Positions 1-61,967 of a DNA stretch of 64,000 bases are shown in pieces (positions within the stretch are counted from its first letter, which is position 1; each line of letters starts with the position of its first letter). Where the stretch lies: the IMG/VR virus record IMGVR_UViG_3300043418_000072, positions 124,001 through 188,000 of that record. One strand, written 5' to 3'. The notes below the pieces were generated by a model. The model was not told the origin of the DNA, searched no databases, and was given only the letters and a program-made list of their open reading frames with translations. The translations under genes were made by a program, and so were the position numbers.

Positions 1-150
1 TTCGGCAAATGGTTCTTGATCGTGTGGCGCCCAGTAATTATTTGTTAGATAGTCCCACCCAAACACATTTGCATTGGCTGCAAATATTTTTGAAAATAAA
101 TGATTCCCGGACCCCTGGGGGCCGGTTATCACCAATAAGGTTTTTGACAT
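1..150 (-). CDS. P-loop/sulfotransferase-like protein, runs off window edge
   Basis: Hand translation MSKTLLVITGPQGSGNHLFSKIF...; ATG overlaps the stop of the 150..1109 gene. Confidence 0.6.
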   Translation of the reverse strand, partial: MSKTLLVITGPQGSGNHLFSKIFAANANVFGWDYLTNNYWAPHDQEPFAE

Positions 151-25628: not shown

Positions 25629-25657
25629 ATTATACTAGATAAATCATTATGGGTCAA
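25629..25657 (-). promoter_or_regulatory. sigma70-type early promoter
   Basis: TTGACC-17-TATAAT. Confidence 0.85.
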
Positions 25658-26499: not shown

Positions 26500-26773
26500 G
26501 TTGTTTACTCAGTATATCAAAAAGTGTGCCAATTTTAAAAACTGCTATATTGTCGGCAGGCTCCTCTACATCGAGTGCAGAGTGGAATTCTATTAGTGTG
26601 CGCATTGCAATCTGCCCAAATGAAATGCCAAACAGTTCAACCCATCTAGTTTTCATTAAGGACTTTGTTCCGTCAAATGTTGCATAGTAGCAATCATCAA
26701 TGATGTCGATACTAACTTTAACCCCGAGAGGTTTTAGTTTAGCTTTGCATTTATCAACAAATTCAAAATCCAT
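26483..26773 (-). CDS. Hypothetical protein
   Basis: TAATG-coupled; ends in TAG. Confidence 0.65.
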   Translation of the reverse strand: MDFEFVDKCKAKLKPLGVKVSIDIIDDCYYATFDGTKSLMKTRWVELFGISFGQIAMRTLIEFHSALDVEEPADNIAVFKIGTLFDILSKQHEQTL

Positions 26774-27039
26774 TAGGACCACTTTAGTGTAAACATCATT
26801 GCATCTTGCTCTCGCTTGAATGCAAAGTAACTGCCGACATTACGCCACTCGCTACTTTTGAGATTCTCGTAGCACCAGCGCTCTTGTTTATCTGTGGTCT
26901 CGGCTTTGACGTGGTACGGCCAATACTTCTTGTTTAGTACTCTCATGCGATGTTCCTCATCAATTTGGGCCCAAAATGCTCTGCTTCGTGGGCCTTCAAA
27001 ACAGCTTGGGTACATGCTGCTGATATCATTATCGATCAC
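26773..27039 (-). CDS. W-cassette; N-terminal PolB motif A-like peptide
   Basis: Ends FKREQDAMMFTLKWS; GTGA-coupled. Confidence 0.8.
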   Translation of the reverse strand: MIDNDISSMYPSCFEGPRSRAFWAQIDEEHRMRVLNKKYWPYHVKAETTDKQERWCYENLKSSEWRNVGSYFAFKREQDAMMFTLKWS

Positions 27040-27251
27040 GCCCATTTTAGTAGAAATGCAGTTATCTCTGCCCGTGTTTTAAACTTAAACGTGTCAAAGC
27101 TCGTGCGGCGCCCGTAGCCAACCTGATCACACCATTTTTGAACGGGATCCATGTCCTCTTCACGCAGGAAAGATTCGTAGCCCCGCGGAGCAACGGGCAT
27201 CGTTGCACGAAGCTGCTTACCCTCGCGTAGCCATTTGATCTTCTTTTCCAT
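27036..27251 (-). CDS. W-cassette
   Basis: Ends AFLLKWA. Confidence 0.8.
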   Translation of the reverse strand: MEKKIKWLREGKQLRATMPVAPRGYESFLREEDMDPVQKWCDQVGYGRRTSFDTFKFKTRAEITAFLLKWA

Positions 27252-27256
27252 GCTGT

Positions 27257-27285
27257 ATTATAGCATAACACCCAATTTAGGTCAA
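27257..27285 (-). promoter_or_regulatory. sigma70-type promoter inside array
   Basis: TTGACC-17-TATAAT; -35 overlaps a TGA stop. Confidence 0.8.
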
Positions 27286-27494
27286 CTCCAACGTAAGCAG
27301 AATAAAGTTAATACTTTTTCATTGGGTACTACCACTGTCATTCCTTGCACTTGGGAATCGGTTTCTTTACACCAGTCTGCCAAGTCTTGGTAGTGTGCGC
27401 TCCAGTACATAATGTCTGACAGAACAATTAGGTGGCCACCATTAAACCATGCGTCCGTTTGCTCAGACTGTGTTGGTAGTACGTAGCGTGAAAT
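27282..27494 (-). CDS. W-cassette (not in track; start uncertain)
   Basis: ...LADWCKETD...TLFCLRWS; no ATG/GTG/TTG at expected start. Confidence 0.6.
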   Translation of the reverse strand: MSRYVLPTQSEQTDAWFNGGHLIVLSDIMYWSAHYQDLADWCKETDSQVQGMTVVVPNEKVLTLFCLRWS

Positions 27495-27495
27495 A

Positions 27496-27894
27496 TTAGC
27501 CCCACTTCAGCACGAATGCTGTCCTATCTTCGGCTCGTTTAAAGCAATAACGGTAGTTAATTTTATCCCATATAAATTCAGGATGCTCGTTGGAGCAGCG
27601 TGGTCCGAATGTTTCTTCACACCATGCATCAACTTGTTCGTAATGCGCCTGGGTTCCTTTGATGTTCCAGAATGCTCCTGCAGACAGGGGCAATCGTGCC
27701 CAATACCATTCCACGATGTTGTTTTCGGTTGCATGACTAGCGGCTTCATCCACGTAAGTCTCCCCGGTTTCGAGTTCGATTCCCATATCCATATGCTGCA
27801 CACCAATGATGTCAGTTGCGATCATTGTGGGCATGACCTTACGGATCATTGGGATCAAGATTTTCATTTGATCGTTGATATTCTTATCAGTCAT
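27496..27894 (-). CDS. W-cassette; N-terminal major-capsid Gol-like peptide
   Basis: DAWCEETFGP, ends AFVLKWG. Confidence 0.8.
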   Translation of the reverse strand: MTDKNINDQMKILIPMIRKVMPTMIATDIIGVQHMDMGIELETGETYVDEAASHATENNIVEWYWARLPLSAGAFWNIKGTQAHYEQVDAWCEETFGPRCSNEHPEFIWDKINYRYCFKRAEDRTAFVLKWG

Positions 27895-28078
27895 TTTGCG
27901 TCCATTTCAATTCATACATAATGTAAACATCTTCATTCATCCAGAGATTATCCAGTCCGTAATTGTAGACTGTACCCCACCGGTCGCCTTCGGGCCCAAA
28001 GTTTTGCTCAAGCCAATGCCATATAGTGGCCTTACGTGGATGCCCCCAATGTTCAATAGCTAGGCCGTATTGCTTCAT
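27887..28078 (-). CDS. W-cassette
   Basis: WLEQNFGP, MYELKW. Confidence 0.75.
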   Translation of the reverse strand: MKQYGLAIEHWGHPRKATIWHWLEQNFGPEGDRWGTVYNYGLDNLWMNEDVYIMYELKWTQND

Positions 28079-28365
28079 AGCCATTTCAACTTGATAAACG
28101 CCAGCAGGTCTTCACGCACAATGTAGATAGCACGGTGCCTGCCGCCGTATATTCTCCAGCGTTCTTTTCCGCCGTTTTCTTCAATCCAGTCACCAAACCA
28201 ATAGCTACAGTTTAACCGACTCCACACATGGCCGTCGTCTTCTTTAAACCCGTACTCGCAGCCTGGCTCAACATAATACAGTCTATCGCCGTGTACCATA
28301 TCATGTTTTGGGTCATGCTTGGACCGAATCCACTCTTGTGAATTAGATCTAGGTCTTTCCATCAT
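28075..28365 (-). CDS. W-cassette
   Basis: Ends FIKLKWL. Confidence 0.75.
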   Translation of the reverse strand: MMERPRSNSQEWIRSKHDPKHDMVHGDRLYYVEPGCEYGFKEDDGHVWSRLNCSYWFGDWIEENGGKERWRIYGGRHRAIYIVREDLLAFIKLKWL

Positions 28366-28574
28366 GCCCACCTCAGTGCAAACATTGCAGCATCTTGTTC
28401 TCGTGCAAAGTAGTATATACGATTTTCAGGGTTAACAAAATCCACTCCGTAATAATCGTAGTCCATATTTAAAATATTGTCCAGCAACCATATACGCAGG
28501 TCTCTAAACTGTCCAGTACTGCGCCATGGTACAGTGACTCGAATTGTACACCAATATTTCTCATGCCGACTCAT
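28362..28574 (-). CDS. W-cassette
   Basis: Ends EQDAAMFALRWA. Confidence 0.8.
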   Translation of the reverse strand: MSRHEKYWCTIRVTVPWRSTGQFRDLRIWLLDNILNMDYDYYGVDFVNPENRIYYFAREQDAAMFALRWA

Positions 28575-28591
28575 GACCACCTCAGTACAAA
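28571..28591 (-). repeat. LRWS junction repeat (minus strand TT[GC/TA]..[T/C]TGAGGTGGTCATGA)
   Basis: 12-mer TCATGACCACCT exact at 28571, 28807, 29324, 44853, 45737, 45964, 46212, 46433; many near copies. Confidence 0.95.
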
Positions 28592-28810
28592 CCATTCAGC
28601 GTCTTTTTTATCACGGAAATCAAACCATTCAATATCAAATGTACCGTCAATGGTTTCACTGCCCATGAACCCTGGGTGATCCTTGCCATAAGTCCAGCGT
28701 TTAAGATTGCCATTATGTACTTCCGGTGGCCCAAAGTTCTTGGTCATCCAATACCACATTTCAGACATTTCTAAAATCGTTCGCTGAGTATTCTTAGTAT
28801 AAACTTTCAT
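28571..28810 (-). CDS. W-cassette
   Basis: WMTKNFGP, ends WFVLRWS. Confidence 0.8.
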   Translation of the reverse strand: MKVYTKNTQRTILEMSEMWYWMTKNFGPPEVHNGNLKRWTYGKDHPGFMGSETIDGTFDIEWFDFRDKKDAEWFVLRWS

Positions 28811-29052
28811 GACCACCTTAATACAAACCAAGCAAACTTCTTTTCATCAATGACATTGTACCCAACTATCTTGTTATGGTACCCTGACAACAGTATCTCT
28901 ACACCGCACACAGTTTCTAGAAAATGCAAGTAAGCATCTTCTTTGATTTGGCCAGTGACGACCTTTGCTTCTGGCGGCAATATGATAGGCTTTTTAAGAA
29001 ATTCGTTATTAGCCTGTCTGACTACAATCTTTTTTACAAGGTCTAAATCCAT
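28807..29052 (-). CDS. W-cassette
   Basis: Ends WFVLRWS. Confidence 0.8.
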   Translation of the reverse strand: MDLDLVKKIVVRQANNEFLKKPIILPPEAKVVTGQIKEDAYLHFLETVCGVEILLSGYHNKIVGYNVIDEKKFAWFVLRWS

Positions 29053-29327
29053 TAACTCCACCTTAGTACAAACAACGCATACTCTTGCTCACATAAGAAC
29101 TTGAACGTATACCTGCCAGTGTATCTCCATTGGTCACCGGCAACGAGTTCTTCTTCACGCTCGGCACTTATAAGTTTGCACCCGCGTTCTCGCAACCATC
29201 TGTATGCTTTGACATATACACTATAGCTAGGCACAGTGTGATACAACCAGTTATTACAAGATGCACCCTCGCATCTATGCTCGTGGCGACAAATATCATC
29301 CCACTCTAACTTAACGGTATCTGTCAT
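29052..29327 (-). CDS. W-cassette
   Basis: Ends LFVLRWS. Confidence 0.8.
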   Translation of the reverse strand: MTDTVKLEWDDICRHEHRCEGASCNNWLYHTVPSYSVYVKAYRWLRERGCKLISAEREEELVAGDQWRYTGRYTFKFLCEQEYALFVLRWS

Positions 29328-29662
29328 GACCACCTCAACACAAACAGAGTTAAGTCTTCCTTACTTGTAAACCAGAACTCGCGTCCAAATATTTGATATT
29401 GCGCTGTAGTGTTCAGGTGTATCCATTTCACAACCTCTGCTATTTGGTGGTTGCCTGGTGTAGCAAACTTGTCGCTAGTAAACGGTGCCTTGACCCATCC
29501 TTCTAACATAAGTCTTTGCCTTTTGATAGTGTTGACAATTTCGTCATCGATCTCTTTTTGCAATGCTGCTCCAACCTCTTGCCATACTTCGTCGTCCTCT
29601 GGCTTCTCAATGGTCCATTTGACTTTGATGGCACGAGTCTTTGCTGCAATAGTTTGTTTCAT
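29324..29662 (-). CDS. W-cassette; N-terminal major-capsid-like segment
   Basis: IAAKTRAIKVKWTIE; ends LFVLRWS. Confidence 0.8.
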   Translation of the reverse strand: MKQTIAAKTRAIKVKWTIEKPEDDEVWQEVGAALQKEIDDEIVNTIKRQRLMLEGWVKAPFTSDKFATPGNHQIAEVVKWIHLNTTAQYQIFGREFWFTSKEDLTLFVLRWS

Positions 29663-30078
29663 GACCATTTTAGTAACAGCATTGAATACAGTTCTTCGTG
29701 TATATTGTAGTTGTTGAACGTGGGGTGACCAAATCGCAGTGCGCCTGTGTTGTAGTGACGGCACCACATATCGGGGTCTTGCTCTTGCACCCACCCGCTA
29801 ATAGTTGAAGGACGACAATGCACAGTGTACCATGTAGCACCAGCTAGAGCAAACGTATCTAACTTCTGGATTTGCTCCTTAATACCCATCTCGTAGTATC
29901 TGCTCTTTAGCATTTGGTAAGTCATTGTGGACTTGCCAGTTTGTCTACCTCCGGCAAAAATCATCATTTCATCAGGATGTATTCCACCTGAGATGTTTTG
30001 AAAAACAGATGAAGACCCGCGCGGCATTACTGCTTCCATTGTTTCAATATCCAGTACTACGGTGTTGCGTTTTGTCAT
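29659..30078 (-). CDS. W-cassette; N-terminal helicase Walker A-like segment
   Basis: IFAGGRQTGKST; ends MLLLKWS. Confidence 0.8.
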   Translation of the reverse strand: MTKRNTVVLDIETMEAVMPRGSSSVFQNISGGIHPDEMMIFAGGRQTGKSTMTYQMLKSRYYEMGIKEQIQKLDTFALAGATWYTVHCRPSTISGWVQEQDPDMWCRHYNTGALRFGHPTFNNYNIHEELYSMLLLKWS

Positions 30079-30278
30079 AGCCATCTCATTATAAAAAGCA
30101 TCTTATGTTCTTCCTTAGAGAACATAAACATACTGTCAAGATATTCCCAATTCTGCCCGTAGTGCTCACGTAGCCAGTTACTAATTTGATACCAAGTACC
30201 GCCGGGAGTATACCAATCTCCTGTACGCTTAAAGCGCACATGGTACGGATATAGTTCTCTTGTAGTTTTGGTTCTCAT
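30075..30278 (-). CDS. W-cassette
   Basis: WLREHYG, ends LFIMRWL. Confidence 0.8.
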   Translation of the reverse strand: MRTKTTRELYPYHVRFKRTGDWYTPGGTWYQISNWLREHYGQNWEYLDSMFMFSKEEHKMLFIMRWL

Positions 30279-30637
30279 TGGGCCCACATCAATGCTGCTA
30301 TTGTAGCATACTTTGTCTTTCCTACCCGAAACTTAATATCCAGAGTATCTATTTCATCTGTCCAAAATCCAAAAGTTCCCATTCTCCATTCCCAATCAAT
30401 GCCCTGACGCCCAACATGCTCTTCTAACCATGGGCGATAGTGATCGTTTGGATCAGCGGAGTCGACGATTACCTCTTCGCCATCAGGATCACAACCCAGA
30501 GAAATTGGGCCATTGGGCCAAATGACCCCAATGCTAGTGCCAGGCACAATGGTCCAGTAAAACCATTCTTTCCATTCTATAAACTTACCAAATTTTACCC
30601 AATCGCATAGCCTGTTCCAGAGATTCCGATCATCCAT
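30275..30637 (-). CDS. W-cassette with N-terminal extension
   Basis: WLEEHVG, ends AALMWAQ. Confidence 0.7.
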   Translation of the reverse strand: MDDRNLWNRLCDWVKFGKFIEWKEWFYWTIVPGTSIGVIWPNGPISLGCDPDGEEVIVDSADPNDHYRPWLEEHVGRQGIDWEWRMGTFGFWTDEIDTLDIKFRVGKTKYATIAALMWAQ

Positions 30638-30638
30638 A

Positions 30639-30869
30639 TTATTTCCATTTCAATGCAAAGAAGGTTGCATCTTTGCGATGTTTAAAGTAGAAAAATGTTG
30701 TGCCAAACGCACTAGCCATGCACCATGTGCCTAACCCTTCCCACTCAACTGGCTTGGACCAAACGTGGTTGCTATAACGAGGATTAGACCCAATATTGTG
30801 CTCGCACCATTCTTCCATTTCACCCTGTAAGTGATAACGATCTTTACCAAATTCAACAGTAGTTGTCAT
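30639..30869 (-). CDS. W-cassette
   Basis: WCEHNIG, ends FFALKWK. Confidence 0.8.
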   Translation of the reverse strand: MTTTVEFGKDRYHLQGEMEEWCEHNIGSNPRYSNHVWSKPVEWEGLGTWCMASAFGTTFFYFKHRKDATFFALKWK

Positions 30870-31099
30870 GACCATCTCAACATAAAAATTGTTCTATCCG
30901 ATTCATTAATAAAGCCCCAATGCTGTTCAGCCCTGTCGCTCCAGCTACCCTGTTTGTTTAACAGCACGGTGCGATATTCCTGTATCATCCAAAGGTAATA
31001 AGGAGTTTCGTAATGATTTACGTTCATCATGTAGTACTCACGTGATTTAGCGTAGTAGGGATCTCGTTCGCAGTAAAATTGGACTAGGTCTGTTTTCAT
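30866..31099 (-). CDS. W-cassette
   Basis: Ends IFMLRWS. Confidence 0.8.
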   Translation of the reverse strand: MKTDLVQFYCERDPYYAKSREYYMMNVNHYETPYYLWMIQEYRTVLLNKQGSWSDRAEQHWGFINESDRTIFMLRWS

Positions 31100-31356
31100 G
31101 ACCATCTCAGCAAAAACGCTACCCTATCTTCATCATTACGAAACCAAAACTTTGCATTGTTAGCATACCAACGAGCACCGGGTTCCCATACACCCATTTC
31201 TGCACTGGCACCAAAGGTTTCTACACACCATGCTAACATATTGCGCCAATTGGTATTTGTGTCATTTAAGCTACTAGGAATCCACCAATCAAAGTCTGGT
31301 CTAACCGTGTAGTAGCGAGCTCCGTGTATGCGCCCTTCTAACAATTCAAACTTCAT
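31096..31356 (-). CDS. W-cassette
   Basis: WCVETFG, ends AFLLRWS. Confidence 0.8.
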   Translation of the reverse strand: MKFELLEGRIHGARYYTVRPDFDWWIPSSLNDTNTNWRNMLAWCVETFGASAEMGVWEPGARWYANNAKFWFRNDEDRVAFLLRWS

Positions 31357-31576
31357 TGCTTGCTTTCAGTGCAAACCAAGTTATGATTTCGTTATTCAGG
31401 CAATCGTGTCGAATCCATACACCATCGGGCGCACTAAACCATTCGCGGTCCACAAGCGGCATCGTGATACGGTTGTCACTAATGTGCAGGCGGCACAGGT
31501 CAATTTCCTCACTGCCCCATATAAAGTCCTTGGGAACGTGTTTGAATTTAAAAAATCGGTGAGTCTCGCTATACAT
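31346..31576 (-). CDS. W-cassette, variant tail
   Basis: WFALKA. Confidence 0.7.
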   Translation of the reverse strand: MYSETHRFFKFKHVPKDFIWGSEEIDLCRLHISDNRITMPLVDREWFSAPDGVWIRHDCLNNEIITWFALKASNEV

Positions 31577-31833
31577 TACTTTGCCCACTTTAGTGCGAAT
31601 AGCACTGCTTCTTCATCACATTCAAACTCAATGAACTTTTCACGAAGATACCCGGGACTGTGGTAGTAAGGATGGCGTGTGTTTGCTTTAAGCCATTCAT
31701 TGACTATATAATCCTTGTAGCTGATTTGCCATTGTGCTGGGACACCATCAATGGTGTGTGCATAGACAACACGGTGCAACACGGGAAAATTAACACCTGG
31801 GAATAACGGATTAGTTTTATAAGTTACTGCCAT
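31576..31833 (-). CDS. W-cassette
   Basis: Ends IEFECDEEAVLFALKWAK. Confidence 0.8.
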   Translation of the reverse strand: MAVTYKTNPLFPGVNFPVLHRVVYAHTIDGVPAQWQISYKDYIVNEWLKANTRHPYYHSPGYLREKFIEFECDEEAVLFALKWAK

Positions 31834-32051
31834 AACAATCCAAACAGTGTTGCATCTTCATCCCGATAAAAACGAATCGCCCATCGTTCGTCGCCATATC
31901 TGCCGGGCCCTTTGTTAACAATAGCAACACGGACGATGCAGGAACGTTCTTGAGGAAAGTGTGCGTCAAGCCACTTTTGTAGAGTTTCCATAGAGAACGT
32001 GCGACTGCCATTCATTAAGGTTGGGTATGGAATTTCAAGCAACTGCTGCAC
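31824..32051 (-). CDS. W-cassette
   Basis: Ends DEDATLFGLLWQ. Confidence 0.8.
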   Translation of the reverse strand: MQQLLEIPYPTLMNGSRTFSMETLQKWLDAHFPQERSCIVRVAIVNKGPGRYGDERWAIRFYRDEDATLFGLLWQ

Positions 32052-33725: not shown

Positions 33726-34006
33726 TAATACGAATGTGTTACCGACTCAGTATAGATTTGTTGTAGTAGATGGATTCTACCTGCGTACCGTAATTGTAAC
33801 ATACATTCACCTTTATCGTCAAATGTGGTTAGTTTTATAACCCCGGGCGAGCTGCGGTAGTGATAGACCTGCCCGCTGGTTTCAATACGCTGATGCTCAC
33901 CTTGCTGGGCGTCTAGTTGTATGCCATTGTTTTTGCAGTAGTCTACATCAGACTGGTCGGGGATAACATTGTGATCCAACACCCAAATTCTTACTATAGT
34001 TAACAT
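33725..34006 (-). CDS. W-cassette-like variant
   Basis: MLQLRY; similar to 48754..49047. Confidence 0.6.
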   Translation of the reverse strand: MLTIVRIWVLDHNVIPDQSDVDYCKNNGIQLDAQQGEHQRIETSGQVYHYRSSPGVIKLTTFDDKGECMLQLRYAGRIHLLQQIYTESVTHSY

Positions 34007-34263
34007 ACACTATCCGCAAAACTCAGAGCAAACATAATAGCAGCTTGTTCCCATTCAAATTGAAATGTAGTGTATTCACTATCCCAAGTTTTTGTGCCTC
34101 CACGCCAATCAATGTAGTAGCGTTTGAAATAGCCCTTATCGCCTGTTGGATAGTCGTCGCACCACTTCATCATAGCATTGACTTCAGGCGAGTTCTTTTT
34201 AATACGCACCTTATATCTAAAGTCGGGGTACTGATTCCCGCCACCGCCGTAAAATAATTCCAT
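34000..34263 (-). CDS. W-cassette
   Basis: KWCDDY, FEWEQAAIMFALSF. Confidence 0.75.
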   Translation of the reverse strand: MELFYGGGGNQYPDFRYKVRIKKNSPEVNAMMKWCDDYPTGDKGYFKRYYIDWRGGTKTWDSEYTTFQFEWEQAAIMFALSFADSVC

Positions 34264-34481
34264 TAGCTCCACCTCAACACAAACATTGTAGCATCTTCTT
34301 CCCTGCGAAATTTAATCCATCCACCATGGCTATCCCAAGTGCCATTACCTAATGCTAGTCCCGGGTGACCGAATGTGGTCCAGCACCATCCGTATATTTC
34401 GCTCATCTCTGGACCTTGTGGACTGTAGTACATTTCCCACTCGTAGTATCGGTCCGGGCGATGTTTGAATTTAATATTCAT
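34263..34481 (-). CDS. W-cassette
   Basis: WCWTTFG, ends EEDATMFVLRWS. Confidence 0.8.
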   Translation of the reverse strand: MNIKFKHRPDRYYEWEMYYSPQGPEMSEIYGWCWTTFGHPGLALGNGTWDSHGGWIKFRREEDATMFVLRWS

Positions 34482-34897
34482 TACACACTCCAGTATAGAC
34501 TAAACATTACAGCATCTTGCTCATTGTTAAATGCAAAAAATAGAATGTTGTGGCTTAGACCCATGCACCCTTGCGTCCATTCGCCATCCCAACTCTTGTC
34601 AACTGGGAGGATATCTTCTCTCCATTTACCGGTGGCATTTGCTGCGCACCACGTGGTCATGTTATCAACTACGGTGATCCATCCTTGGCCATGCCGCCGT
34701 TCCAGTGGCACTGTGTCGTCAAACGGGACGAGGTAAGGGTAGCCACGATACACGTCCTTACGAATACTACCACCACGTGCGCAAAAATCAGGATCATTTA
34801 TGAGATCAAACTGGCGCTGAGTCCATCCCTTCTTCTTAAGGTAACGGGCATGTCGCCATGCTTGAAACCTACCTACCGTAGCGTGTAGTAACTTCAT
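34481..34897 (-). CDS. W-cassette with N-terminal extension
   Basis: Ends EQDAVMFSLYWSV. Confidence 0.75.
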   Translation of the reverse strand: MKLLHATVGRFQAWRHARYLKKKGWTQRQFDLINDPDFCARGGSIRKDVYRGYPYLVPFDDTVPLERRHGQGWITVVDNMTTWCAANATGKWREDILPVDKSWDGEWTQGCMGLSHNILFFAFNNEQDAVMFSLYWSV

Positions 34898-35084
34898 CTA
34901 GTGTTTTCTTTGCTATTTTTCCTGACGGATGATCTGGGTGCATACGTGCGATATCATCTAGTGCAGTCCACATCAACTCGTGTTCGTGTTGTTGCTGGTA
35001 TACCTTATCCCGCAAGCGACTGGCATCCATAATGCTTAGGACACCAGCAATTAACTTGGGAAGGATACGAGCAAGGAATTCCAA
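34869..35084 (-). CDS. Hypothetical protein
   Basis: Start uncertain; ends in TAG. Confidence 0.55.
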   Translation of the reverse strand: MEFLARILPKLIAGVLSIMDASRLRDKVYQQQHEHELMWTALDDIARMHPDHPSGKIAKKTLDEVTTRYGR

Positions 35085-35312
35085 TTATAAGTACTTCAAT
35101 CTAAACATTGTTTCTGCTGCGTCATTGAAGAAGTCTAAGTAGACAGTAGTGATGTAACCTGTTTGTTCTCGGTAAACCTGATGATGGCGGTCGGTGAATC
35201 CTAACTCACGCTTCATTACAGATCGCAAGAGCCAAACACTAGGCTTGTCTGCGTACTCAATTTTAATCTGAGCTCGGATCTTGCGCCACTCAGTATCGGT
35301 TAGTGTGATCAT
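35085..35312 (-). CDS. W-cassette
   Basis: Ends TMFRLKYL. Confidence 0.75.
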   Translation of the reverse strand: MITLTDTEWRKIRAQIKIEYADKPSVWLLRSVMKRELGFTDRHHQVYREQTGYITTVYLDFFNDAAETMFRLKYL

Positions 35313-35541
35313 ACTTTAACTTGAAAAAGGTTGCATCCTCATCTTTAAGTTTAGCAGTTACTCTGTAACGAAGAGAGTATGAGTGGTAATCGTTGCACTT
35401 GCTCCATTGCGGGGTTTCAATTGCATTAGCCATAACCCATTTCCCTGCATCACTTTGCTGCCATTCCCATAGAGGCCATGCGGCATAAAGGTCCGGGTCA
35501 TCAACATCCCCCACTGAAAATTCATGAACAGCTAGAGTCAC
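35290..35541 (-). CDS. W-cassette
   Basis: DEDATFFKLKY. Confidence 0.75.
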   Translation of the reverse strand: MTLAVHEFSVGDVDDPDLYAAWPLWEWQQSDAGKWVMANAIETPQWSKCNDYHSYSLRYRVTAKLKDEDATFFKLKYDHTNRY

Positions 35542-35720
35542 CGCCATTTTAATGCAAATAGTGTAGCATCAGAGGGACTAGAGAAATCAAACCTATACGT
35601 GGGATTGTTACCCAGCATACTGTTTAAGTCTATTGTCCATCCCTTAATACCAAATTGTTGTCTGCACCAGCCGCCCGCCTCAAGCGCCTTATCGGCACCA
35701 TTAATTGTGATAGAGTTCAT
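35538..35720 (-). CDS. W-cassette (first of array 1)
   Basis: WCRQQFG, ends LFALKWR. Confidence 0.8.
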   Translation of the reverse strand: MNSITINGADKALEAGGWCRQQFGIKGWTIDLNSMLGNNPTYRFDFSSPSDATLFALKWR

Positions 35721-35726
35721 AGTACT

Positions 35727-35755
35727 ATTATACACTAAATGCCTTTATGCGTCAA
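35727..35755 (-). promoter_or_regulatory. sigma70-type promoter heading W-array 1
   Basis: TTGACG-17-TATAAT. Confidence 0.8.
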
Positions 35756-43990: not shown

Positions 43991-44170
43991 CTAACTCCAT
44001 TTTAAAACAAACATCATTTCATCCTCGGGCGTGTCAAACTCAACCATAAAGTACAAGTAATCGTCTTTACGGTAGCTGTCATGAAAATGCCCATTGGGAA
44101 TATCACTGAGCCCGCTTTCAATCATGCGTTGCTGAATGTTGACCCAGTCAATCATACGGTACGTTAACAT
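43991..44170 (-). CDS. W-cassette (59 aa, not in track)
   Basis: ...VEFDTPEDEMMFVLKWS-TAG. Confidence 0.75.
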   Translation of the reverse strand: MLTYRMIDWVNIQQRMIESGLSDIPNGHFHDSYRKDDYLYFMVEFDTPEDEMMFVLKWS

Positions 44171-44171
44171 G

Positions 44172-44462
44172 TCATGCCCACTTTAGTAAGAACCAAGCAT
44201 ACTTTTGCTCGTCGAGCACTGTGGTGATAACCCTCTGTCCACTATTGTGATAGCGATACTCAAACCCATGCACATGTTTACACCATTCCCCAAAACCAAA
44301 GTCTGTGACTGTATCTTTAATCTCAGGCCACTGGCTCCATGCGTTTTGAATTGCAGTTAGTGCTTGATCCTTTGGTGCCATTATTTCCTTACAGAGGTTT
44401 GTGCCGTAGACGCTGTTTAGTTGCATCTTGCGATGCAATTTTGCCCATTCTTCTTTAGTCAT
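44172..44462 (-). CDS. W-cassette; N-terminal PolB motif B-like peptide
   Basis: RKMQLNSVYG; ends WFLLKWA. Confidence 0.8.
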   Translation of the reverse strand: MTKEEWAKLHRKMQLNSVYGTNLCKEIMAPKDQALTAIQNAWSQWPEIKDTVTDFGFGEWCKHVHGFEYRYHNSGQRVITTVLDEQKYAWFLLKWA

Positions 44463-44665
44463 GCAAACCTCAATGCAAACATGGTAGCATATTTTTCATC
44501 AGAAAAATACCAGTCAGACCATTCACCTTCACCGGTTTCCCACACATAAAACCACTCACCTCCATACTCGCCAATATTTTTTTCGCACCACTTAACTCTA
44601 GCCTCAGTGCGTTCATGGTGCCATCCATAGAGTCTGACTTCGGTCATTGGTTCACTTAATGTCAT
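44459..44665 (-). CDS. W-cassette
   Basis: WCEKNIG, ends MFALRFA. Confidence 0.8.
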   Translation of the reverse strand: MTLSEPMTEVRLYGWHHERTEARVKWCEKNIGEYGGEWFYVWETGEGEWSDWYFSDEKYATMFALRFA

Positions 44666-44856
44666 AGCCACCTCAATGCAAACAGTGTAGCATCTTCTTC
44701 TTTATGAAACCAAAATGTTCGGATAGTGTCCCATGCCCGACGCTTGCCATTAGGTTCCGGTGGTCCAAAGTTATCCAAGCACCACTTCCACGCGACCTGT
44801 GTACCACTTTCCCCGTATACATCACGAAGTTTCTTGCTGATTTTAATTTCAATCAT
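44662..44856 (-). CDS. W-cassette
   Basis: WCLDNFGP, ends LFALRWL. Confidence 0.8.
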   Translation of the reverse strand: MIEIKISKKLRDVYGESGTQVAWKWCLDNFGPPEPNGKRRAWDTIRTFWFHKEEDATLFALRWL

Positions 44857-45101
44857 GACCACCTCAACATAAACCAAGAGTACAATTCTTCGTCTTCAAA
44901 CTCGATCCAGTGCAGAACACTACTTTCAAATAAGTTGCCCACCTCTTCCATGTAGTACACTGCACGGTACTCAACCAGTGCTGCATTAACATAAGCGTCG
45001 GTTACTGCCTGTGGTCCCACTTGTTCTTGCAGGTGTGCAACAAATTTGTTCCACACAGGGATAGGTGCATAGTCTTTAACAAGATCCAATCGTATCATCA
45101 A
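44853..45101 (-). CDS. W-cassette
   Basis: Ends WFMLRWS. Confidence 0.8.
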   Translation of the reverse strand: MMIRLDLVKDYAPIPVWNKFVAHLQEQVGPQAVTDAYVNAALVEYRAVYYMEEVGNLFESSVLHWIEFEDEELYSWFMLRWS

Positions 45102-45265
45102 AACCTCAGCGCAAACTCTGTGGCTTTTAACGGGTCACGAAAACGAAAGTCCCAGCCACAGCCATCAGAACTGCACACCCAATCATTATAGTCGAGATTG
45201 GCATGGCACCATTCTGCCCCGCTGGTGTAATCATCAATTGTTACTATTGCCCATTTCGCCATCAT
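45098..45265 (-). CDS. W-cassette
   Basis: Ends EFALRF. Confidence 0.75.
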   Translation of the reverse strand: MMAKWAIVTIDDYTSGAEWCHANLDYNDWVCSSDGCGWDFRFRDPLKATEFALRF

Positions 45266-45543
45266 AAGTGCCTTAATGTAAACATAATTAGATTTTCTTC
45301 TTCGAAGAAGTCTGCATAACGCTTGCTGTATTCTGTATAAATGCGGCCACCACATGACCAAACATAATGATCAAACGCTTGACCAGCACCATAACGTAAG
45401 TTAAGTCGATCAAAGTGGTCAATCCAATGTCCCGAGGTCTTATACCCATTGTTTGCAGCCCACTTCTGGAAGATAGTGTTTAGCTGGTCGGATTCAATAC
45501 GTGCCTTTTTCATAAGGGAGTCTCTTGTATATTGCTTTTTCAT
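45262..45543 (-). CDS. W-cassette
   Basis: Ends MFTLRHL. Confidence 0.75.
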   Translation of the reverse strand: MKKQYTRDSLMKKARIESDQLNTIFQKWAANNGYKTSGHWIDHFDRLNLRYGAGQAFDHYVWSCGGRIYTEYSKRYADFFEEENLIMFTLRHL

Positions 45544-45740
45544 TTATGGATCAATGCAAACATTATAGCATCTTTTTCATTTTCGAAGTAAACGCCATGT
45601 CCTCCCATGCTAAAATGTCCGATTCCATCAAACTCTTCGCACCAAAGCAATGCCTCTATCCAACCAATGGTTTTTTGGTTTTCAGATAATGGAATGTATG
45701 TGTAGTCGCAATCCATTAGCATAGTTAGCTCTTGCTTCAT
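45540..45740 (-). CDS. W-cassette
   Basis: FENEKDAIMFAL. Confidence 0.75.
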   Translation of the reverse strand: MKQELTMLMDCDYTYIPLSENQKTIGWIEALLWCEEFDGIGHFSMGGHGVYFENEKDAIMFALIHK

Positions 45741-45967
45741 GACCACCTCAACATAAACATTGTCATGTGTTGTTCGTCAGGAAACGATACCCACAACTCG
45801 GGTTTGCGACCAACTGGTCCAACCTTAACAACATTGTAGTCTTGCTTGAGCCAATCCCAAATAGTTATGTGATGCCCGTCGTTGTTGTGTATGTCACGAC
45901 CAATGTTGTCCCAGTAGTAATTGGCAATCTTCTGAAAGTATGGGCGAATGTCTTTGCGTAGTTTCAT
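45737..45967 (-). CDS. W-cassette
   Basis: Ends MFMLRWS; close to 46433. Confidence 0.8.
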   Translation of the reverse strand: MKLRKDIRPYFQKIANYYWDNIGRDIHNNDGHHITIWDWLKQDYNVVKVGPVGRKPELWVSFPDEQHMTMFMLRWS

Positions 45968-46215
45968 GACCACCTCAACACAAACATGGTATAGTCGTGC
46001 TCGTCTTTGAAGGTCACTACAAATCTATACCCACTGTCTTTACCTTCAATACAAGCACCGACTTGAGCAATTTCTTCTTCAAGGATATGGTCCACCAATG
46101 CCGGAGGTGCGGACTTTTTAGTAATACGGCGTGCCCATACATCTGCATACCAACGCTCGAAGTAATTCCTGGGTTGTTTACAGTTGATGTTTTGGTAATA
46201 CTCTTTTACAATCAT
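45964..46215 (-). CDS. W-cassette
   Basis: Ends MFVLRWS. Confidence 0.8.
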   Translation of the reverse strand: MIVKEYYQNINCKQPRNYFERWYADVWARRITKKSAPPALVDHILEEEIAQVGACIEGKDSGYRFVVTFKDEHDYTMFVLRWS

Positions 46216-46436
46216 GACCACCTCAACACAAAGTAAGTTAAATCTTGTTCAGTGCTAAACACAATGCACTTGGTTTCGTTATTCCAGTGTGCATTGTAGT
46301 CTCTGAGAAACTCTTCTCCCGAGAGGGGAGCACGGCGGGTCTTCATCATCTCAGGTTCTATCACTGCTCTATAGAAGTTTTTGTATGCCATTGGGCTTTG
46401 GTCGTAATCGTCGGATATGTAAAGAGTTGTACTCAT
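46212..46436 (-). CDS. W-cassette
   Basis: Ends YFVLRWS. Confidence 0.8.
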   Translation of the reverse strand: MSTTLYISDDYDQSPMAYKNFYRAVIEPEMMKTRRAPLSGEEFLRDYNAHWNNETKCIVFSTEQDLTYFVLRWS

Positions 46437-46645
46437 GACCACCTCAGTATAAACCAATTGAGTGTTTTCTCATCGGGAAATGACACCACTATCTGCTGGC
46501 TGGCTGCACTGCCAAAAGTGTGGCTAATACCGTACTCACGGCCAAGCCAATCCCAGACACTAATATTAGACTTGTATAGATCATCCCAATAGTGGTTAGC
46601 AACCTTCTTGAAGTAGGGATAGATGTCTGCATAGATTTTAGTCAT
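46433..46645 (-). CDS. W-cassette
   Basis: Ends WFILRWS. Confidence 0.8.
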   Translation of the reverse strand: MTKIYADIYPYFKKVANHYWDDLYKSNISVWDWLGREYGISHTFGSAASQQIVVSFPDEKTLNWFILRWS

Positions 46646-46926
46646 GCCCACCTCAACAAGAATACTGCACGATCACGCTCGTACTTGAAGAAGATTGTTT
46701 CAAATCTCCAGATCCAGTCACGCCCAAAATGTTCTTCACACCACAGCATAACTTCTTCAAACGGTGCGGCACCATTAAACTGCCAGCAGGAGAAACAGTG
46801 ACACACAATATTAACGGCATCTGCGTCATTGGTGTACAGGCAAGGAGTCTCTGCAACAAACTCACGCAGGCGCAGGCGAAGAGTGCCGTAGATTGAATCA
46901 ATTTGCAGTGTGTCTTTTACTATCAT
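46642..46926 (-). CDS. W-cassette
   Basis: WCEEHFG, ends VFLLRWA. Confidence 0.8.
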   Translation of the reverse strand: MIVKDTLQIDSIYGTLRLRLREFVAETPCLYTNDADAVNIVCHCFSCWQFNGAAPFEEVMLWCEEHFGRDWIWRFETIFFKYERDRAVFLLRWA

Positions 46927-47144
46927 GAAAATCTCAACATAAACAACAAATAGTCGTGCTCATTCTCAAAGTAGAACTTGGTAGTCTCTGGATCTTTATC
47001 AATGGCGTTCCATTCGGATAGTGCCTGCGTGATAGAGTCGGCCTCATTGAAATCGTACCCTTGTGTTTCGGCATAGTCGCGAAAGTTTTCCCACCAATGC
47101 TTGCGTCCAGTGCCAGTTTCAGAGTCGATGTCTAGCTCAATCAT
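46923..47144 (-). CDS. W-cassette
   Basis: Ends LFMLRFS. Confidence 0.8.
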   Translation of the reverse strand: MIELDIDSETGTGRKHWWENFRDYAETQGYDFNEADSITQALSEWNAIDKDPETTKFYFENEHDYLLFMLRFS

Positions 47145-47371
47145 GACATTCTCAGTAAAAACATTACATAATCTCGTTCGTTGTTGAACACTAGAAAATT
47201 CTCTCTAGTACGCCAACTCCACTCACGCTCGGCATTAAACTCTTGTTTGACAAAGTCGAAAAACTGCATTTGAATTTTTCCAGTAGCAGTCATGTGCTTT
47301 ACAATTTTAACATTGTAATCATTTTCTGTCACAGCCACTCGATATTGCTTACGCCAGAACCGCCAGTTCAT
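47141..47371 (-). CDS. W-cassette
   Basis: Ends MFLLRMS. Confidence 0.8.
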   Translation of the reverse strand: MNWRFWRKQYRVAVTENDYNVKIVKHMTATGKIQMQFFDFVKQEFNAEREWSWRTRENFLVFNNERDYVMFLLRMS

Positions 47372-47577
47372 GAGTACTTGATCCTAAAAAATATGTATAA
47401 CTGCTCGTCGTGAAACTTGACATTATAAGTGTACTTGGCTTTGCTTTTGGCAACAGTTGCCTTCCACTTAGTTAGTTCTGTACGAATGTGTTCTTGCCCA
47501 CCAGCTGCATCAACAAAGTTGCAGAAGTAGGCATCACCGTTGCGGCCACCATAGTAATGATACTGACGTTTAATCAT
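47368..47577 (-). CDS. W-cassette
   Basis: Ends FFRIKYS. Confidence 0.75.
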   Translation of the reverse strand: MIKRQYHYYGGRNGDAYFCNFVDAAGGQEHIRTELTKWKATVAKSKAKYTYNVKFHDEQLYIFFRIKYS

Positions 47578-50280: not shown

Positions 50281-50394
50281 ACCATAGTTAAGTACACTGC
50301 CGGAGTAGCAAGAACCAACTTGCCCACTTTGTTCCGTCCTGGATAGATTACTCTACTGGTTCCCAGGCAAACCGCTAATGTACTTAACTATGGT
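50281..50394 (-). ncRNA. Structured tRNA 3' trailer closed by a perfect 16-bp inverted repeat
   Basis: ACCATAGTTAAGTACA (50281-50296) / TGTACTTAACTATGGT (50379-50394); internal GNRA hairpin. Confidence 0.6.
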
Positions 50395-50465
50395 GCGCTA
50401 GGCGGGAATCGAACCCGCGATTCAGAGGTTTAGAAACTCCTGCTATACCATTTAGCTACTAGCGC
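50391..50465 (-). tRNA. tRNA with CUA anticodon (amber suppressor), CCA encoded
   Basis: 75-nt cloverleaf GCGCTAG...TT-CTA-AA...TTCGATT...CTAGCGC-A-CCA. Confidence 0.9.
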
Positions 50466-50517: not shown

Positions 50518-51921
50518 TTATTTCATGCTGTTAGCACGAACTTGTTCGAAAGTGATTTCGTTAAACAATGCACCGTTCTGGAAAACAGTTTGCAATGCTT
50601 CAGTCCAACCACCAATGCCTTTGTCGCTCCAACCAGTAGGGGCTTGCACACTTGTTGAAAACTCGCCACCACTGTTGGTCCACAACTTAACACGGCCTTT
50701 GAGTGATGCTTTGCCACTGTCAGTGATGGGGTCTTTGTAAACATCAACCCATTCACCGTTGACACATGCACTGGAACATTTCATAGCCCACTTCTGTGTA
50801 TCACGATCAATAGCTTGCAGCAAAGCACCACCCATACCAAATGCAAAGTTATCTGCTGACCAACCTTGGAAATCAACCATAGTGCGCAAGATGCTTTGGA
50901 TGCTAACAGTGTTGATACCATCGCCCCAGATCATGCGTACATTGTTGAGTACCTTGTAGCCCTTGTCATTGGTAGTGTATCCAAAGCCTTCTGCAAGAAT
51001 TGCAATCATCTTTGGCATGACTTCAACAGGATCACCTGAGTCAGGACGGATAACAACTGTGGCACCTGAATCAATCACTTGCTGTTTCAAGTCACCAGTA
51101 CTCCACATTTTACATGCTTCGTAGATGTTGTAGCTGTCACTAACAACTGCAACAATACCGCCTGGCTTACCAAACTGTGTGACCATGTTGCTGTAGGCGT
51201 TCAGTTCACCTGCACGACCCCAACTAGTGATAGTACTGTGCTCGGCAGCTGGAATTGAAAAACCTGCGATGCCAGCATTGTAATATTCGCGAGCGTACAG
51301 TACACCAGTAATAGTGTCGGTACCCATGAAGTTGACCAAGTGGGCCGCACCCCCAATACCAGCACTCTCCATTGAAGATACACCACGAGCACCAAAATCG
51401 TGCAGTTTAAAACCGATAGTAGTAGGATCACCAGATTTCTCCAAGTATTCTTGCAAGATGTTTTTAATGTACTTGCTTTGTGTTGAGACTGTAGTTGGGT
51501 ACCAGACTGCACGAAGCAATGGAGTTTCCAACCATGTGGTTAAACCGTGGCACTTGGGGTCAGTGTTTTCGATTGTGACCAGTGCGTTTCCAACTGGGAC
51601 AACAGTGCCTTCTGGTACGGCTTTAATGACCACGGGCAAGTAGCCGTTGTGTGCTTCGACGATGTAGTCCCACATGGTGCGGTCGAATGGTTCGCCGTGT
51701 GCTGTGAGGATTTCTTCTGCGATGTCAACGTCGGCTTTTGTAATTGGGTCAAGTAAATACTCCTTGAAGAAAATTTGCAGTCCAACAACTTGTGTGAATG
51801 TGAATTTGCCGCCGCGGGCTGCAATGTAGCTGAATACATTAGTAGTGCCAGCTGGGTATTGAGGCGCCATACTAACTTTGTAGCTGTCAGTATTGAGAAT
51901 GATGTTTTTAGAGAGTTTCAT
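50518..51921 (-). CDS. nadV: Nicotinamide phosphoribosyltransferase
   Basis: TDSYK, LHDFGARG, AAEHS, VSDSY, IRPDSG. Confidence 0.95.
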   Translation of the reverse strand: MKLSKNIILNTDSYKVSMAPQYPAGTTNVFSYIAARGGKFTFTQVVGLQIFFKEYLLDPITKADVDIAEEILTAHGEPFDRTMWDYIVEAHNGYLPVVIKAVPEGTVVPVGNALVTIENTDPKCHGLTTWLETPLLRAVWYPTTVSTQSKYIKNILQEYLEKSGDPTTIGFKLHDFGARGVSSMESAGIGGAAHLVNFMGTDTITGVLYAREYYNAGIAGFSIPAAEHSTITSWGRAGELNAYSNMVTQFGKPGGIVAVVSDSYNIYEACKMWSTGDLKQQVIDSGATVVIRPDSGDPVEVMPKMIAILAEGFGYTTNDKGYKVLNNVRMIWGDGINTVSIQSILRTMVDFQGWSADNFAFGMGGALLQAIDRDTQKWAMKCSSACVNGEWVDVYKDPITDSGKASLKGRVKLWTNSGGEFSTSVQAPTGWSDKGIGGWTEALQTVFQNGALFNEITFEQVRANSMK

Positions 51922-52461: not shown

Positions 52462-52679
52462 TATAACTCCACTCTTTCAAAGTAAATCTTGGCAAAGCCC
52501 ATGGGGCTTGTTGCACGGCGTTCAATTTGTAGATACAAACGTGTCGGAGTATCCTCTAACACATGGTGCACCACAATCTGATCCATGGTATCGTTAAACA
52601 CTTGAGTCCTAACTTGTTCAGCTAAGAACAGTTGTTGACTACGCCGGGGTTGATAGTTGCTCTTGTGCATCTTAAACAC
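52461..52679 (-). CDS. Hypothetical protein
   Basis: Coupled ORF. Confidence 0.6.
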   Translation of the reverse strand: MFKMHKSNYQPRRSQQLFLAEQVRTQVFNDTMDQIVVHHVLEDTPTRLYLQIERRATSPMGFAKIYFERVEL

Positions 52680-55605: not shown

Positions 55606-55631
55606 AGAAAATAGGGGCCGAAGCCCCTATT
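55606..55631 (-). terminator. Terminator after tmRNA
   Basis: AATAGGGGC-TTCG-GCCCCTATT-TTCT. Confidence 0.85.
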
Positions 55632-55632
55632 A

Positions 55633-55953: not shown

Positions 55954-55980
55954 ACTTATATTATAGCACAAGACTATAAT

Positions 55981-61934: not shown

Positions 61935-61967
61935 AAAAATACCTGTATTAGGTATTTATACGCACTA

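What the first reader, a model, noticed from the sequence alone, without database searches (positions are those of the whole stretch)
27790..27861. Gol-like peptide outside the capsid gene
Seen: ILIPMIRKVMPTMIATDIIGVQHM. Known (recalled): T4 Gol is AVMGMVRRAIPNLIAFDICGVQPMNSPTG; it binds EF-Tu and activates the Lit protease. I count 11/24 identities, and the match covers the Gol window almost exactly. Inferred: an EF-Tu-binding module or a decoy for a capsid sensor; the P-to-H change might detune activation.
Basis: partly seen in the sequence, partly recalled or inferred. Interest (0 to 1): 0.85.

Follow-up and report, generated by a model that had tools for sequence, protein, structure and literature searches.

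The report
Capsid-arm copy on a small phage protein
A jumbo phage carries a small, conserved, probably early gene whose first 28 conserved residues copy the N-terminal arm of its own kind of major capsid protein (the stretch known in T4 as Gol), fused to an uncharacterised module. It may act as a mimic of unassembled capsid protein, but what it binds is unknown.

Summary
The peptide is real. It is residues 12-35 of an intact 132-aa ORF on the minus strand (27496-27894).

- **Homology:** it is a true homologue of the N-terminal arm of T4-type major capsid proteins (MCPs). Pfam Gp23 scores above its cut-off. hhalign against MCPs of the PA5oct/Rak2 jumbo-phage clade gives 97.5%, E 7e-12. Identity is 16/25 to those MCPs and 11/24 to the T4 Gol window.
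- **Architecture:** homology ends after 28 residues. The rest is an acidic linker and a C-terminal alpha/beta module ending in F-x-L-(R/K)-W. At least 35 tandem paralogs in the window and about 3,700 metagenomic clusters share it. It has no named family and no solved fold.
- **Conservation:** 17 orthologs, 38-91% identical, dN/dS about 0.1-0.3. The copy is old, with third-codon identity to MCP genes near random.
- **Second chimera:** a paralog 1.4 kb upstream carries the MCP E-loop/spine segment. MCP is the only recurrent donor (22 of 150 members scanned).
- **Proline:** invariant in MCPs, but His here, Thr in a 95% relative, and Ala or Ser in other chimeras.

Best reading: an early-expressed mimic of the MCP N-arm. 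An EF-Tu or sensor decoy role is plausible but untested.

The parts
27496..27894 (-). Chimeric ORF, 132 aa: MCP N-arm copy, acidic linker and C-terminal module. Its ATG overlaps the stop of the upstream gene by 8 nt.
   Evidence: ORF list and sequence. There are 17 orthologs of the same length and architecture. dN/dS is about 0.1-0.3 where dS is measurable.
27784..27867 (-). MCP-derived segment, residues 10-37. It is homologous to clade MCP residues 58-85 and covers T4 gp23 about 92-119, i.e. the Gol window.
   Evidence: Pfam Gp23 E 2.6e-6, above cut-off. hhalign 97.5%, E 6.9e-12. BLASTP to T4 gp23. 16/25 identical to clade MCPs. Nucleotide identity to MCP genes is at most 67% and third positions match at 33%.
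27793..27795 (-). Codon 34, CAT (His), in place of the proline that is invariant in MCPs.
   Evidence: Window, L002 and L003 have CAT. L004 has ACA (Thr). Other orthologs have CCN (Pro). 160 of 160 MCPs have Pro.
27721..27783 (-). Acidic linker and conserved hairpin, residues 38-58 (orthologs carry the motif TGETYVDEA). It is not MCP-like.
   Evidence: Invariant G44, E45, Y47, D49 and E50 across orthologs. It lies outside the hhalign match.
27499..27720 (-). C-terminal alpha/beta module, residues 59-132, ending in F-V-L-K-W-G. This is the family-defining part.
   Evidence: A leave-one-out HMM of the window paralogs hits it at E 2.5e-10. AF2 pLDDT is 80-90 with a strand-helix-strand-strand-helix pattern. 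No Pfam, NCBIfam or PHROG family and no PDB fold match.
29324..29794 (-). Second chimeric paralog: MCP E-loop/spine-helix segment (about 29525-29677) fused to the same module. The true start is probably an internal ATG.
   Evidence: Pfam Gp23 profile positions 124-194, E 7e-4. hhalign to MCPs 92%, E 6e-7, MCP residues 150-210. tblastn 30% over 87 aa. Orthologs occur in L004, L173 and L174.
26773..31857 (-). Main tandem array of overlapping small paralogs of the module family, containing both chimeras. Further arrays lie at about 34000-35744 and 43991-47383.
   Evidence: Motif scan. Family HMM: 35 window ORFs at E<1e-3. Alignment A3.
27257..27285 (-). Strong sigma-70-like promoter (TTGACC, 17 nt, TATAAT, with TG) just downstream of the ORF's run. 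Similar sites lie at 35727-35755 and 25629-25657.
   Evidence: Consensus scan, 11 of 12 matches, on the coding strand and at or next to gene boundaries. No T4-late TATAAATA motif lies near the array.

Best explanation
Shown:
- The ORF is a conserved chimeric gene of an uncultured jumbo phage of about 354 kb, related to Pseudomonas phage PA5oct.
- An old copy of the MCP's N-terminal arm (28 residues, starting a few residues after the predicted mature N-terminus and ending at the G-V-Q-P-M motif) is joined by an acidic linker to a small alpha/beta module.
- The module defines a very large family of small phage proteins that has no name.
- The arm copy is predicted to be flexible, and it is kept by purifying selection as a peptide.
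- It is freed from one capsid-specific constraint: the invariant proline varies in the chimeras.

Inferred:
- The gene sits in a translationally coupled run of small genes among replication and nucleotide-metabolism genes, with sigma-70-like promoters, so it is probably made early, before capsid protein.
- The protein then works as a displayed linear-motif mimic of unassembled MCP. It would occupy a partner that normally recognises the free N-arm.
- I consider a host factor that reads this short motif the most likely partner. In T4 that is EF-Tu together with the Lit protease. The protein would then be a non-productive competitor (decoy or antagonist) of a short-motif capsid sensor.
- The neighbouring E-loop/spine chimera would do the same for a second MCP epitope.
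For: - **Homology limited to the arm:**
- **Fragment starts near the mature MCP N-terminus:** MCP alignment and the chimeras P0076 and P0125.
- **Conserved architecture:** 17 orthologs, with the arm the best-kept part in the most distant one. Against L171, pN is 0.20-0.26 in the arm and 0.47-0.50 in the rest. dN/dS is 0.13-0.23 for pairs with measurable dS.
- **No gene conversion with the capsid gene:** third-position identity is 33%.
- **MCP is the only recurrent donor:** 22 of the 150 members scanned (the ORF, its 17 orthologs and 132 further members) hit Gp23 and no other Pfam family recurs. Two classes exist, N-arm and E-loop/spine, both conserved in related contigs and often adjacent.
- **Proline constraint lifted:** invariant in 160 MCPs but H, T, A or S in chimeras.
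- **Arm predicted flexible, module confident:**
- **Context suggests early expression:** sigma-70-like promoters, no late motif, overlapping starts and stops.
- **Not seen in virions:** the one family member in PA5oct carries no virion-MS flag, unlike its neighbours.
- **Literature:**
  - The T4 gp23 N-terminal region 66-105 is flexible and exposed before expansion (PMC9546572).
  - Lit is triggered by gp23 (bioRxiv 10.64898/2026.09.05.749240).
  - Lit and CapRel read short MCP motifs, and EF-Tu also joins the MCP-Avs7 complex (bioRxiv 10.64898/2026.01.04.697583).
Against: - No binding or phenotype data exist.
- The host and its defences are unknown.
- From my own knowledge of the Lit literature, the free T4 Gol peptide alone activates Lit. 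A mimic could therefore trigger such a sensor rather than block it, and early triggering of an abortive system would hurt the phage.
- The fragment is only 46% identical to T4 Gol.
- The same MCP stretch also contacts scaffold, portal and neighbouring subunits in T4, so a capsid-directed role fits equally well.
- Early timing is inferred from consensus promoter matches, whose total number is not above chance.
- The module's function is unknown.
- The cognate MCP of this genome could not be retrieved.
Confidence: 0.33

Rival explanations
1. Capsid-directed role. The arm copy binds what the real arm binds during head assembly: the scaffolding core, the portal whiskers, or the groove on neighbouring capsomers. 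The protein would then modulate assembly of its own capsid (timing, size, or a minor or decoration protein), or poison the capsids of co-infecting relatives.
For: - In T4 the homologous stretch is thought to touch the scaffold in the unexpanded head. It then forms the arm and N-fist with intra- and inter-capsomer contacts and the Soc site.
- Mutations A94V and G97S change head length, and Met98 contacts the portal whisker (PMC9546572).
- The second chimera carries the E-loop/spine segment, another subunit-interface element.
- MCP is the only recurrent donor.
- The arm is nearly invariant across about 160 clade MCPs, so one mimic would fit many relatives.
Against: - The gene lies in an early-type array with no late-promoter motif nearby.
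- The proline that is invariant in MCPs is dispensable in the chimeras.
- The PA5oct family member was not flagged in virion mass spectrometry.
- A dominant-negative arm would also hit the phage's own near-identical MCP.
Confidence: 0.28
2. Packaging signal. The MCP-like arm acts as a capsid-targeting sequence that carries the module into the prohead. The protein would then be injected with the DNA as an early effector, analogous to the T4 internal proteins.
For: - The short N-terminal flexible peptide corresponds to a stretch that in T4 probably faces the scaffold inside the prohead.
- It belongs to a polymorphic multi-paralog family of small proteins in a plastic region.
Against: - Most family members lack any MCP piece (128 of the 150 scanned).
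- No canonical L/I-x-E protease site follows the arm (inspection of alignment A1).
- The PA5oct member is not flagged in virion MS.
Confidence: 0.1
3. Functionless relic. Illegitimate recombination or homing-endonuclease traffic once joined a piece of a capsid gene to a module gene. The N-terminal piece is carried along with no role of its own.
For: - Relatives such as Paride have many split genes and a homing endonuclease right after the MCP gene.
- Arrays are shuffled between genomes.
- Between the window and its 95% relative, 11 of 12 nucleotide differences fall in non-synonymous codons.
Against: - Synonymous sites are saturated among orthologs, yet the arm stays recognisable and is the best-conserved part in the most distant ortholog.
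- Diverse chimeras from other lineages keep the same motif.
- Third-codon identity to MCP genes is near random, so the protein-level similarity has been maintained by selection.
Confidence: 0.1
4. Chance resemblance or mis-called ORF.
For: The match is short (28 residues).
Against: - Pfam scores above its gathering score. Profile-profile E is 7e-12. A clade MCP HMM gives E 2.5e-8.
- Orthologs share start, length and stop.
Confidence: 0.01

Closest known systems
Gol region of T4 gp23 (residues 94-122) and the Lit protease / EF-Tu exclusion system of prophage e14
   Same: The segment is homologous and covers the same window. It is a short linear motif at the start of the mature MCP.
   Different: Here it is a separate 132-aa gene, probably early, not part of the late capsid gene. 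It is closer to its own clade's MCP (16/25). The proline of G-V-Q-P-M is His. EF-Tu binding, Lit activation and the presence of lit in the host are all untested.
N-terminal arm of T4-type (HK97-fold) major capsid proteins, Pfam PF07068; clade of PA5oct, Rak2, GAP32
   Same: The first conserved block of the family is copied: MCP residues 58-85, with the motif P-x-I-R-(R/K)-V-M-P-x-x-I-A-x-(D/E)-I-x-G-V-Q-x-M.
   Different: Only 28 of about 390 residues are present. There is no E-loop, spine, P or A domain, so it cannot build a shell. It evolves independently of the MCP gene.
T4 gp24 vertex protein (a paralog of gp23)
   Same: Both are duplications of capsid-protein sequence within a phage genome.
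   Different: gp24 is a full-length HK97-fold paralog. BLASTP of the ORF against gp24 is not significant (E 0.2).
T4 internal proteins with an N-terminal capsid-targeting sequence (own knowledge)
   Same: A short N-terminal peptide on small, polymorphic proteins encoded in a plastic region.
   Different: The T4 targeting sequence is not MCP-derived and is removed at an L/I-x-E site. Here the conserved family part is C-terminal, and no virion evidence exists.
Phage-encoded molecular mimics used against defence, for example the Ocr DNA mimic (own knowledge); MCP sensors such as CapRel and Avs7
   Same: The idea is the same: a phage protein imitates the ligand of a host sensor. MCP is a frequent trigger, and EF-Tu takes part in two MCP-linked systems.
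   Different: My literature searches found no described phage protein that imitates its own capsid protein. The function here is only inferred.

Membership tests
Pfam PF07068 Gp23 (T4-type major capsid protein) | Sequence scores above the family's gathering score | tested here: met
   27.6 bits against a cut-off of 24.4, E 2.6e-6
Pfam PF07068 Gp23 (T4-type major capsid protein) | Match spans the HK97-fold body (E-loop, spine helix, P and A domains; about 376 profile positions; protein of about 390-520 aa) | tested here: not met
   Only profile positions 5-32 match. hhalign aligns 28 columns. The ORF is 132 aa. It is a fragment, not a capsid protein.
Gol peptide / Lit activator | Homologous to gp23 residues 94-122 | tested here: met
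BLASTP aligns ORF 16-35 with gp23 98-117, E 2e-5.
Gol peptide / Lit activator | Lies inside the late major capsid gene | tested here: not met
   It is a separate small ORF in an array of small genes. No MCP gene lies in the window.
Gol peptide / Lit activator | Binds EF-Tu (domains II-III) and makes it a substrate for Lit | not testable with these tools
   No complex prediction or assay is available here.
Gol peptide / Lit activator | Host encodes a Lit-type (peptidase U49) protease | not tested
   Host unknown. A beta-type tmRNA and a TctC-like gene hint at a betaproteobacterium.
C-terminal 'F-x-L-R-W' module family of small phage proteins (unnamed; defined here) | C-terminal region of about 50-70 aa matches the family profile | tested here: met
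   A leave-one-out HMM of 28 window paralogs hits ORF residues about 64-131 at E 2.5e-10. The profile finds 3,707 cluster representatives.
C-terminal 'F-x-L-R-W' module family of small phage proteins (unnamed; defined here) | Module sits at the extreme C-terminus; gene lies in a tandem array of overlapping small ORFs | tested here: met
   The ORF ends in V-L-K-W-G followed by the stop. It lies in the array 26773-31857 with overlapping starts and stops.
T4-type internal proteins (capsid-targeting sequence) | N-terminal targeting peptide followed by a prohead-protease site (L/I-x-E) | tested here: inconclusive
   No L/I-x-E follows the arm. Only a conserved V-D-E at residues 48-50 is present (alignment A1).
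T4-type internal proteins (capsid-targeting sequence) | Present in virions | not testable with these tools
   The only indirect datum is that PA5oct family member EST35_0247 lacks the ESI-MS/MS note that its neighbours carry.

The most novel reading that the evidence does not exclude
Abundant environmental jumbo phages encode a set of early decoys built from epitopes of their own major capsid protein: the N-arm, which is the Gol equivalent, and the E-loop/spine segment. Both are displayed on a common small module. The decoys would blunt host immune sensors that read short capsid motifs (Lit-type, possibly through EF-Tu) before capsid protein appears. This would be the first case of a phage mimicking its own PAMP.
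Probability: 0.22. Interest if true: 0.85.

Novelty: new variant of a known kind. Interest (0 to 1): 0.6.

Why it matters
Capsid proteins are among the commonest triggers of bacterial immunity. Lit and CapRel read short motifs in them.

A conserved small phage protein that carries just such a motif, detached from the capsid gene and freed from capsid constraints, gives a concrete and testable candidate. It could be a counter-measure against capsid sensing, or a new kind of head-assembly modulator.

It also gives a first handle on a very large family of small phage proteins that has no annotation: about 3,700 clusters, with at least 35 copies in this window alone.

Tried and rejected
1. **Cognate MCP of the window's own genome.** Three viral-contig scans, with GAP32, Paride and L168 MCPs as queries, and one protein search did not return the window's contigs. 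Those contigs are IMGVR_UViG_3300043418_000072, 3300048625_000152 and 3300046092_000062. The comparison therefore rests on about 160 clade MCPs.
2. **Fragments of many essential genes.** I tested the idea that the family's N-termini are pieces of many different essential genes and rejected it. Only Gp23 recurs. The P-loop paralog at 29659-30084 gave only weak RNR and UvsX hits and no match to Paride UvsX pieces.
3. **Gene conversion with the capsid gene.** Rejected. Nucleotide identity is at most 67% and third positions match at 33%.
4. **Fold of the module.** Two AF2 models and three Foldseek runs gave no PDB match. In BFVD they matched only uncharacterised phage proteins. A PDB sequence search gave nothing.
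5. **Other libraries.** The ESM Atlas gave only unnamed viral clusters. NCBIfam gave nothing.
6. **Cultured phages.** No cultured phage has the chimera at tblastn sensitivity.
7. **Single or repeated capture.** The module tree is too poorly resolved to tell.
8. **TAG recoding.** A CUA-anticodon tRNA is present, but there are no TAG-interrupted long ORFs, and this ORF ends in TAA.
9. **Prior descriptions.** Literature searches for capsid-mimic decoys in phages found none.

Full report
**What is there.** The reported peptide is encoded on the minus strand. It forms residues 12-35 of an intact ORF at 27496-27894, which is 132 aa long with an ATG start and a TAA stop. The start codon overlaps the stop of the upstream gene by 8 nt. 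The window holds no capsid gene. Its larger genes are a clamp loader, DNA ligase, NAMPT, an NMNAT/Nudix protein, an Ig-domain fibre-like protein and others. The window matches IMG/VR contig 3300043418_000072 (354 kb) at 100% identity over the queried ORF, and two further contigs at 100% and 95%. The nearest cultured relatives are the Pseudomonas jumbo phages PA5oct and Paride, with 57% identity in the clamp loader. Megablast against cultured phages finds nothing.

**Is the resemblance real?** Yes.
- Pfam Gp23 hits residues 10-37 at E 2.6e-6, above its curated cut-off, on profile positions 5-32 of 376.
- PHROG 138, major head protein, agrees.
- tblastn finds only major head genes of Rak2/GAP32-like jumbo phages, at 58% over 31 aa.
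- A profile of 18 orthologs against a profile of 12 clade MCPs gives 97.5% probability and E 6.9e-12. It aligns exactly 28 columns, ORF 10-37 with MCP 58-85.
- In about 160 MCPs of this clade the segment is almost invariant and shares 16 of 25 residues with the ORF.
- Against T4 gp23, taken from the T4 record, BLASTP aligns ORF 16-35 with gp23 98-117 (E 2e-5). gp24 does not match.

The fragment is therefore a copy of the arm of its own clade's MCP. T4 Gol is the homologous stretch in a more distant relative.

**Anatomy.** After the arm come an acidic, highly conserved linker (residues 38-58) and a C-terminal alpha/beta module (residues about 59-132) ending in F-V-L-K-W-G.

Two AF2 models give the module pLDDT 80-90 and the arm below 55, so the arm is flexible or only folds on a partner. 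Foldseek finds no solved structure. In BFVD it finds only uncharacterised proteins of uncultured phages.

The module defines a large family:
- 35 ORFs in the window hit a leave-one-out HMM at E<1e-3. The ORF itself scores E 2.5e-10.
- They form tandem arrays of overlapping genes at 26.8-31.9, 34-35.7 and 44-47.4 kb.
- A profile of 29 window copies finds 3,707 cluster representatives among 1.84 billion proteins. Nearly all of the 150 best that are listed are 45-155 aa long with the module at the very C-terminus.
- None has a name, and Pfam, NCBIfam and PHROGs have no model for it.
- PA5oct and Paride have at least one weak member.

**The chimera is conserved, old and not alone.** Seventeen orthologs, 38-91% identical, have the same length and architecture and sit in similar arrays.

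Synonymous sites are largely saturated. Where dS can be measured, dN/dS is about 0.1-0.3 in both the arm and the rest. In the most distant ortholog the arm is the best-kept part, with pN 0.20-0.26 against 0.47-0.50. Nucleotide identity of the arm to MCP genes is at most 67%, with third positions at 33%. So there has been no recent transfer or gene conversion, and the similarity is maintained at the protein level.

A second paralog at 29324-29794 carries MCP residues of about 150-210, the E-loop strand and spine helix. It has orthologs in three related contigs, usually within a few genes of the N-arm chimera.

I scanned 150 family members: the ORF, its 17 orthologs and 132 further members. Of these, 22 hit Gp23 and no other Pfam family recurs. 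Independent-looking N-arm chimeras (P0076, P0081, P0115, P0125, P0128, P0148, P0149) keep the same motif, and some extend up to about 70 MCP residues. The module tree is too weak to say whether capture happened once or repeatedly.

**The proline.** All other orthologs and 160 of 160 MCPs have G-V-Q-P-M. The window and its two identical contigs have His (CAT). The 95% relative has Thr (ACA). Each is a single step from CCN, so these were two independent changes. Other chimeras have Ala or Ser at this position. The constraint that fixes this proline in capsid proteins does not apply to the chimeras. That argues they do not use the segment as a capsid building block. Whether the change tunes a sensor is unknown.

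**Timing.** The ORF is the second-last gene of a run of about 15 translationally coupled genes. Strong sigma-70-like promoters (11 of 12 matches) lie on the coding strand at or next to gene boundaries at 35.7, 27.3 and 25.6 kb. The T4-type late motif is absent from the array. The overall promoter count is not above chance, so early expression is an inference. The PA5oct family member lacks the virion-MS flag that its neighbours carry.

**Mechanism.** In T4 the homologous stretch belongs to the flexible N-terminal region.
- It probably faces the scaffold in the unexpanded head.
- Later it forms the arm and N-fist, with inter-capsomer and Soc contacts.
- It holds head-length mutations (A94V, G97S).
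- It touches the portal whisker through Met98 (PMC9546572).

It is also the Gol trigger of Lit. Lit and CapRel are described as reading short MCP motifs, and EF-Tu also joins the Avs7-MCP complex.

A free, early, selected copy of this motif on a carrier domain is best explained as a competitive mimic of unassembled MCP. I rank a host partner (a short-motif sensor or EF-Tu) slightly above a capsid-assembly partner. The reasons are the early-type context, the relaxed proline and the missing virion signal. The margin is small. A mimic could also activate a Lit-like sensor rather than block it. A packaging-signal role and a functionless relic are less likely (see rivals).

**Novelty.** Pfam hits on these small proteins exist in precomputed tables, but I found no description of a phage protein that copies its own capsid arm. 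The module family is unannotated. I file it as a new variant of known kinds (domain-fragment chimeras and molecular mimics), with a minority chance of being a new class of anti-sensor decoy.

Noticed in passing
window 29324-29794 (-): Second chimeric paralog. It carries the MCP E-loop/spine-helix segment (MCP residues about 150-210) on the same C-terminal module, and is conserved in L004, L173 and L174.
   Followed up: yes
window 29659-30084 (-): A paralog with a P-loop (G-G-R-Q-T-G-K-S-T) in its N-terminal half. It has weak hits to RNR large subunit and UvsX-like families, but no match to the Paride UvsX pieces. Its origin is unresolved.
   Followed up: partly
window 55608-55998 (-) and 150-1109 (-): A phage-encoded tmRNA of the betaproteobacterial two-piece type (Rfam RF01850, 110 bits) and a TctC/Bug-like solute-binding gene. 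Together they hint at a betaproteobacterial host.
   Followed up: no
window 50391-50465 (-): A tRNA with anticodon CUA (amber-suppressor type). TAG ends only 10 of 164 long minus-strand reading frames. No TAG-interrupted long ORF was found.
   Followed up: partly
window 50518-51921 (-) and 52672-53691 (-): NAMPT plus a bifunctional NMNAT/Nudix gene, forming an NAD+ salvage pair. Such pairs have been linked to countering NAD-depleting defences (own knowledge).
   Followed up: no
window 57231-58310 (+): This reading frame would be continuous for 359 codons if a single in-frame TGA were read through. It may be a broken gene or a recoding site.
   Followed up: no
window 27496-27894 vs L004:10001-10396: Between the window and its 95% relative, 11 of the gene's 12 nucleotide differences lie in non-synonymous codons. 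Two of these are whole-codon changes. The gene is nevertheless more similar (97%) than its flanks (86-93%).
   Followed up: partly
window 61953-61960 (-), 59487-61934 (-): One of the only two T4-late-like TATAAATA motifs lies just upstream of an 815-aa amidoligase-like gene.
   Followed up: no
proteins P0018, P0038, P0050 (family hits): Some family members hold two copies of the C-terminal module in tandem, as if neighbouring array genes had fused.
   Followed up: no
L087:5971-10844, L088:8301-9878 (phage Paride): The cultured relative has a UvsX-like gene in two pieces, with a homing endonuclease gene just downstream of the second piece. Another homing endonuclease lies directly after the MCP gene. 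This is a possible source of gene-fragment shuffling.
   Followed up: no
clade MCPs: The MCP of this jumbo-phage clade is extremely common in metagenomes. All 8,000 scored candidates were hits at 90% clustering. The N-arm chimera is rare by comparison, with 5 loci in IMG/VR.
   Followed up: no
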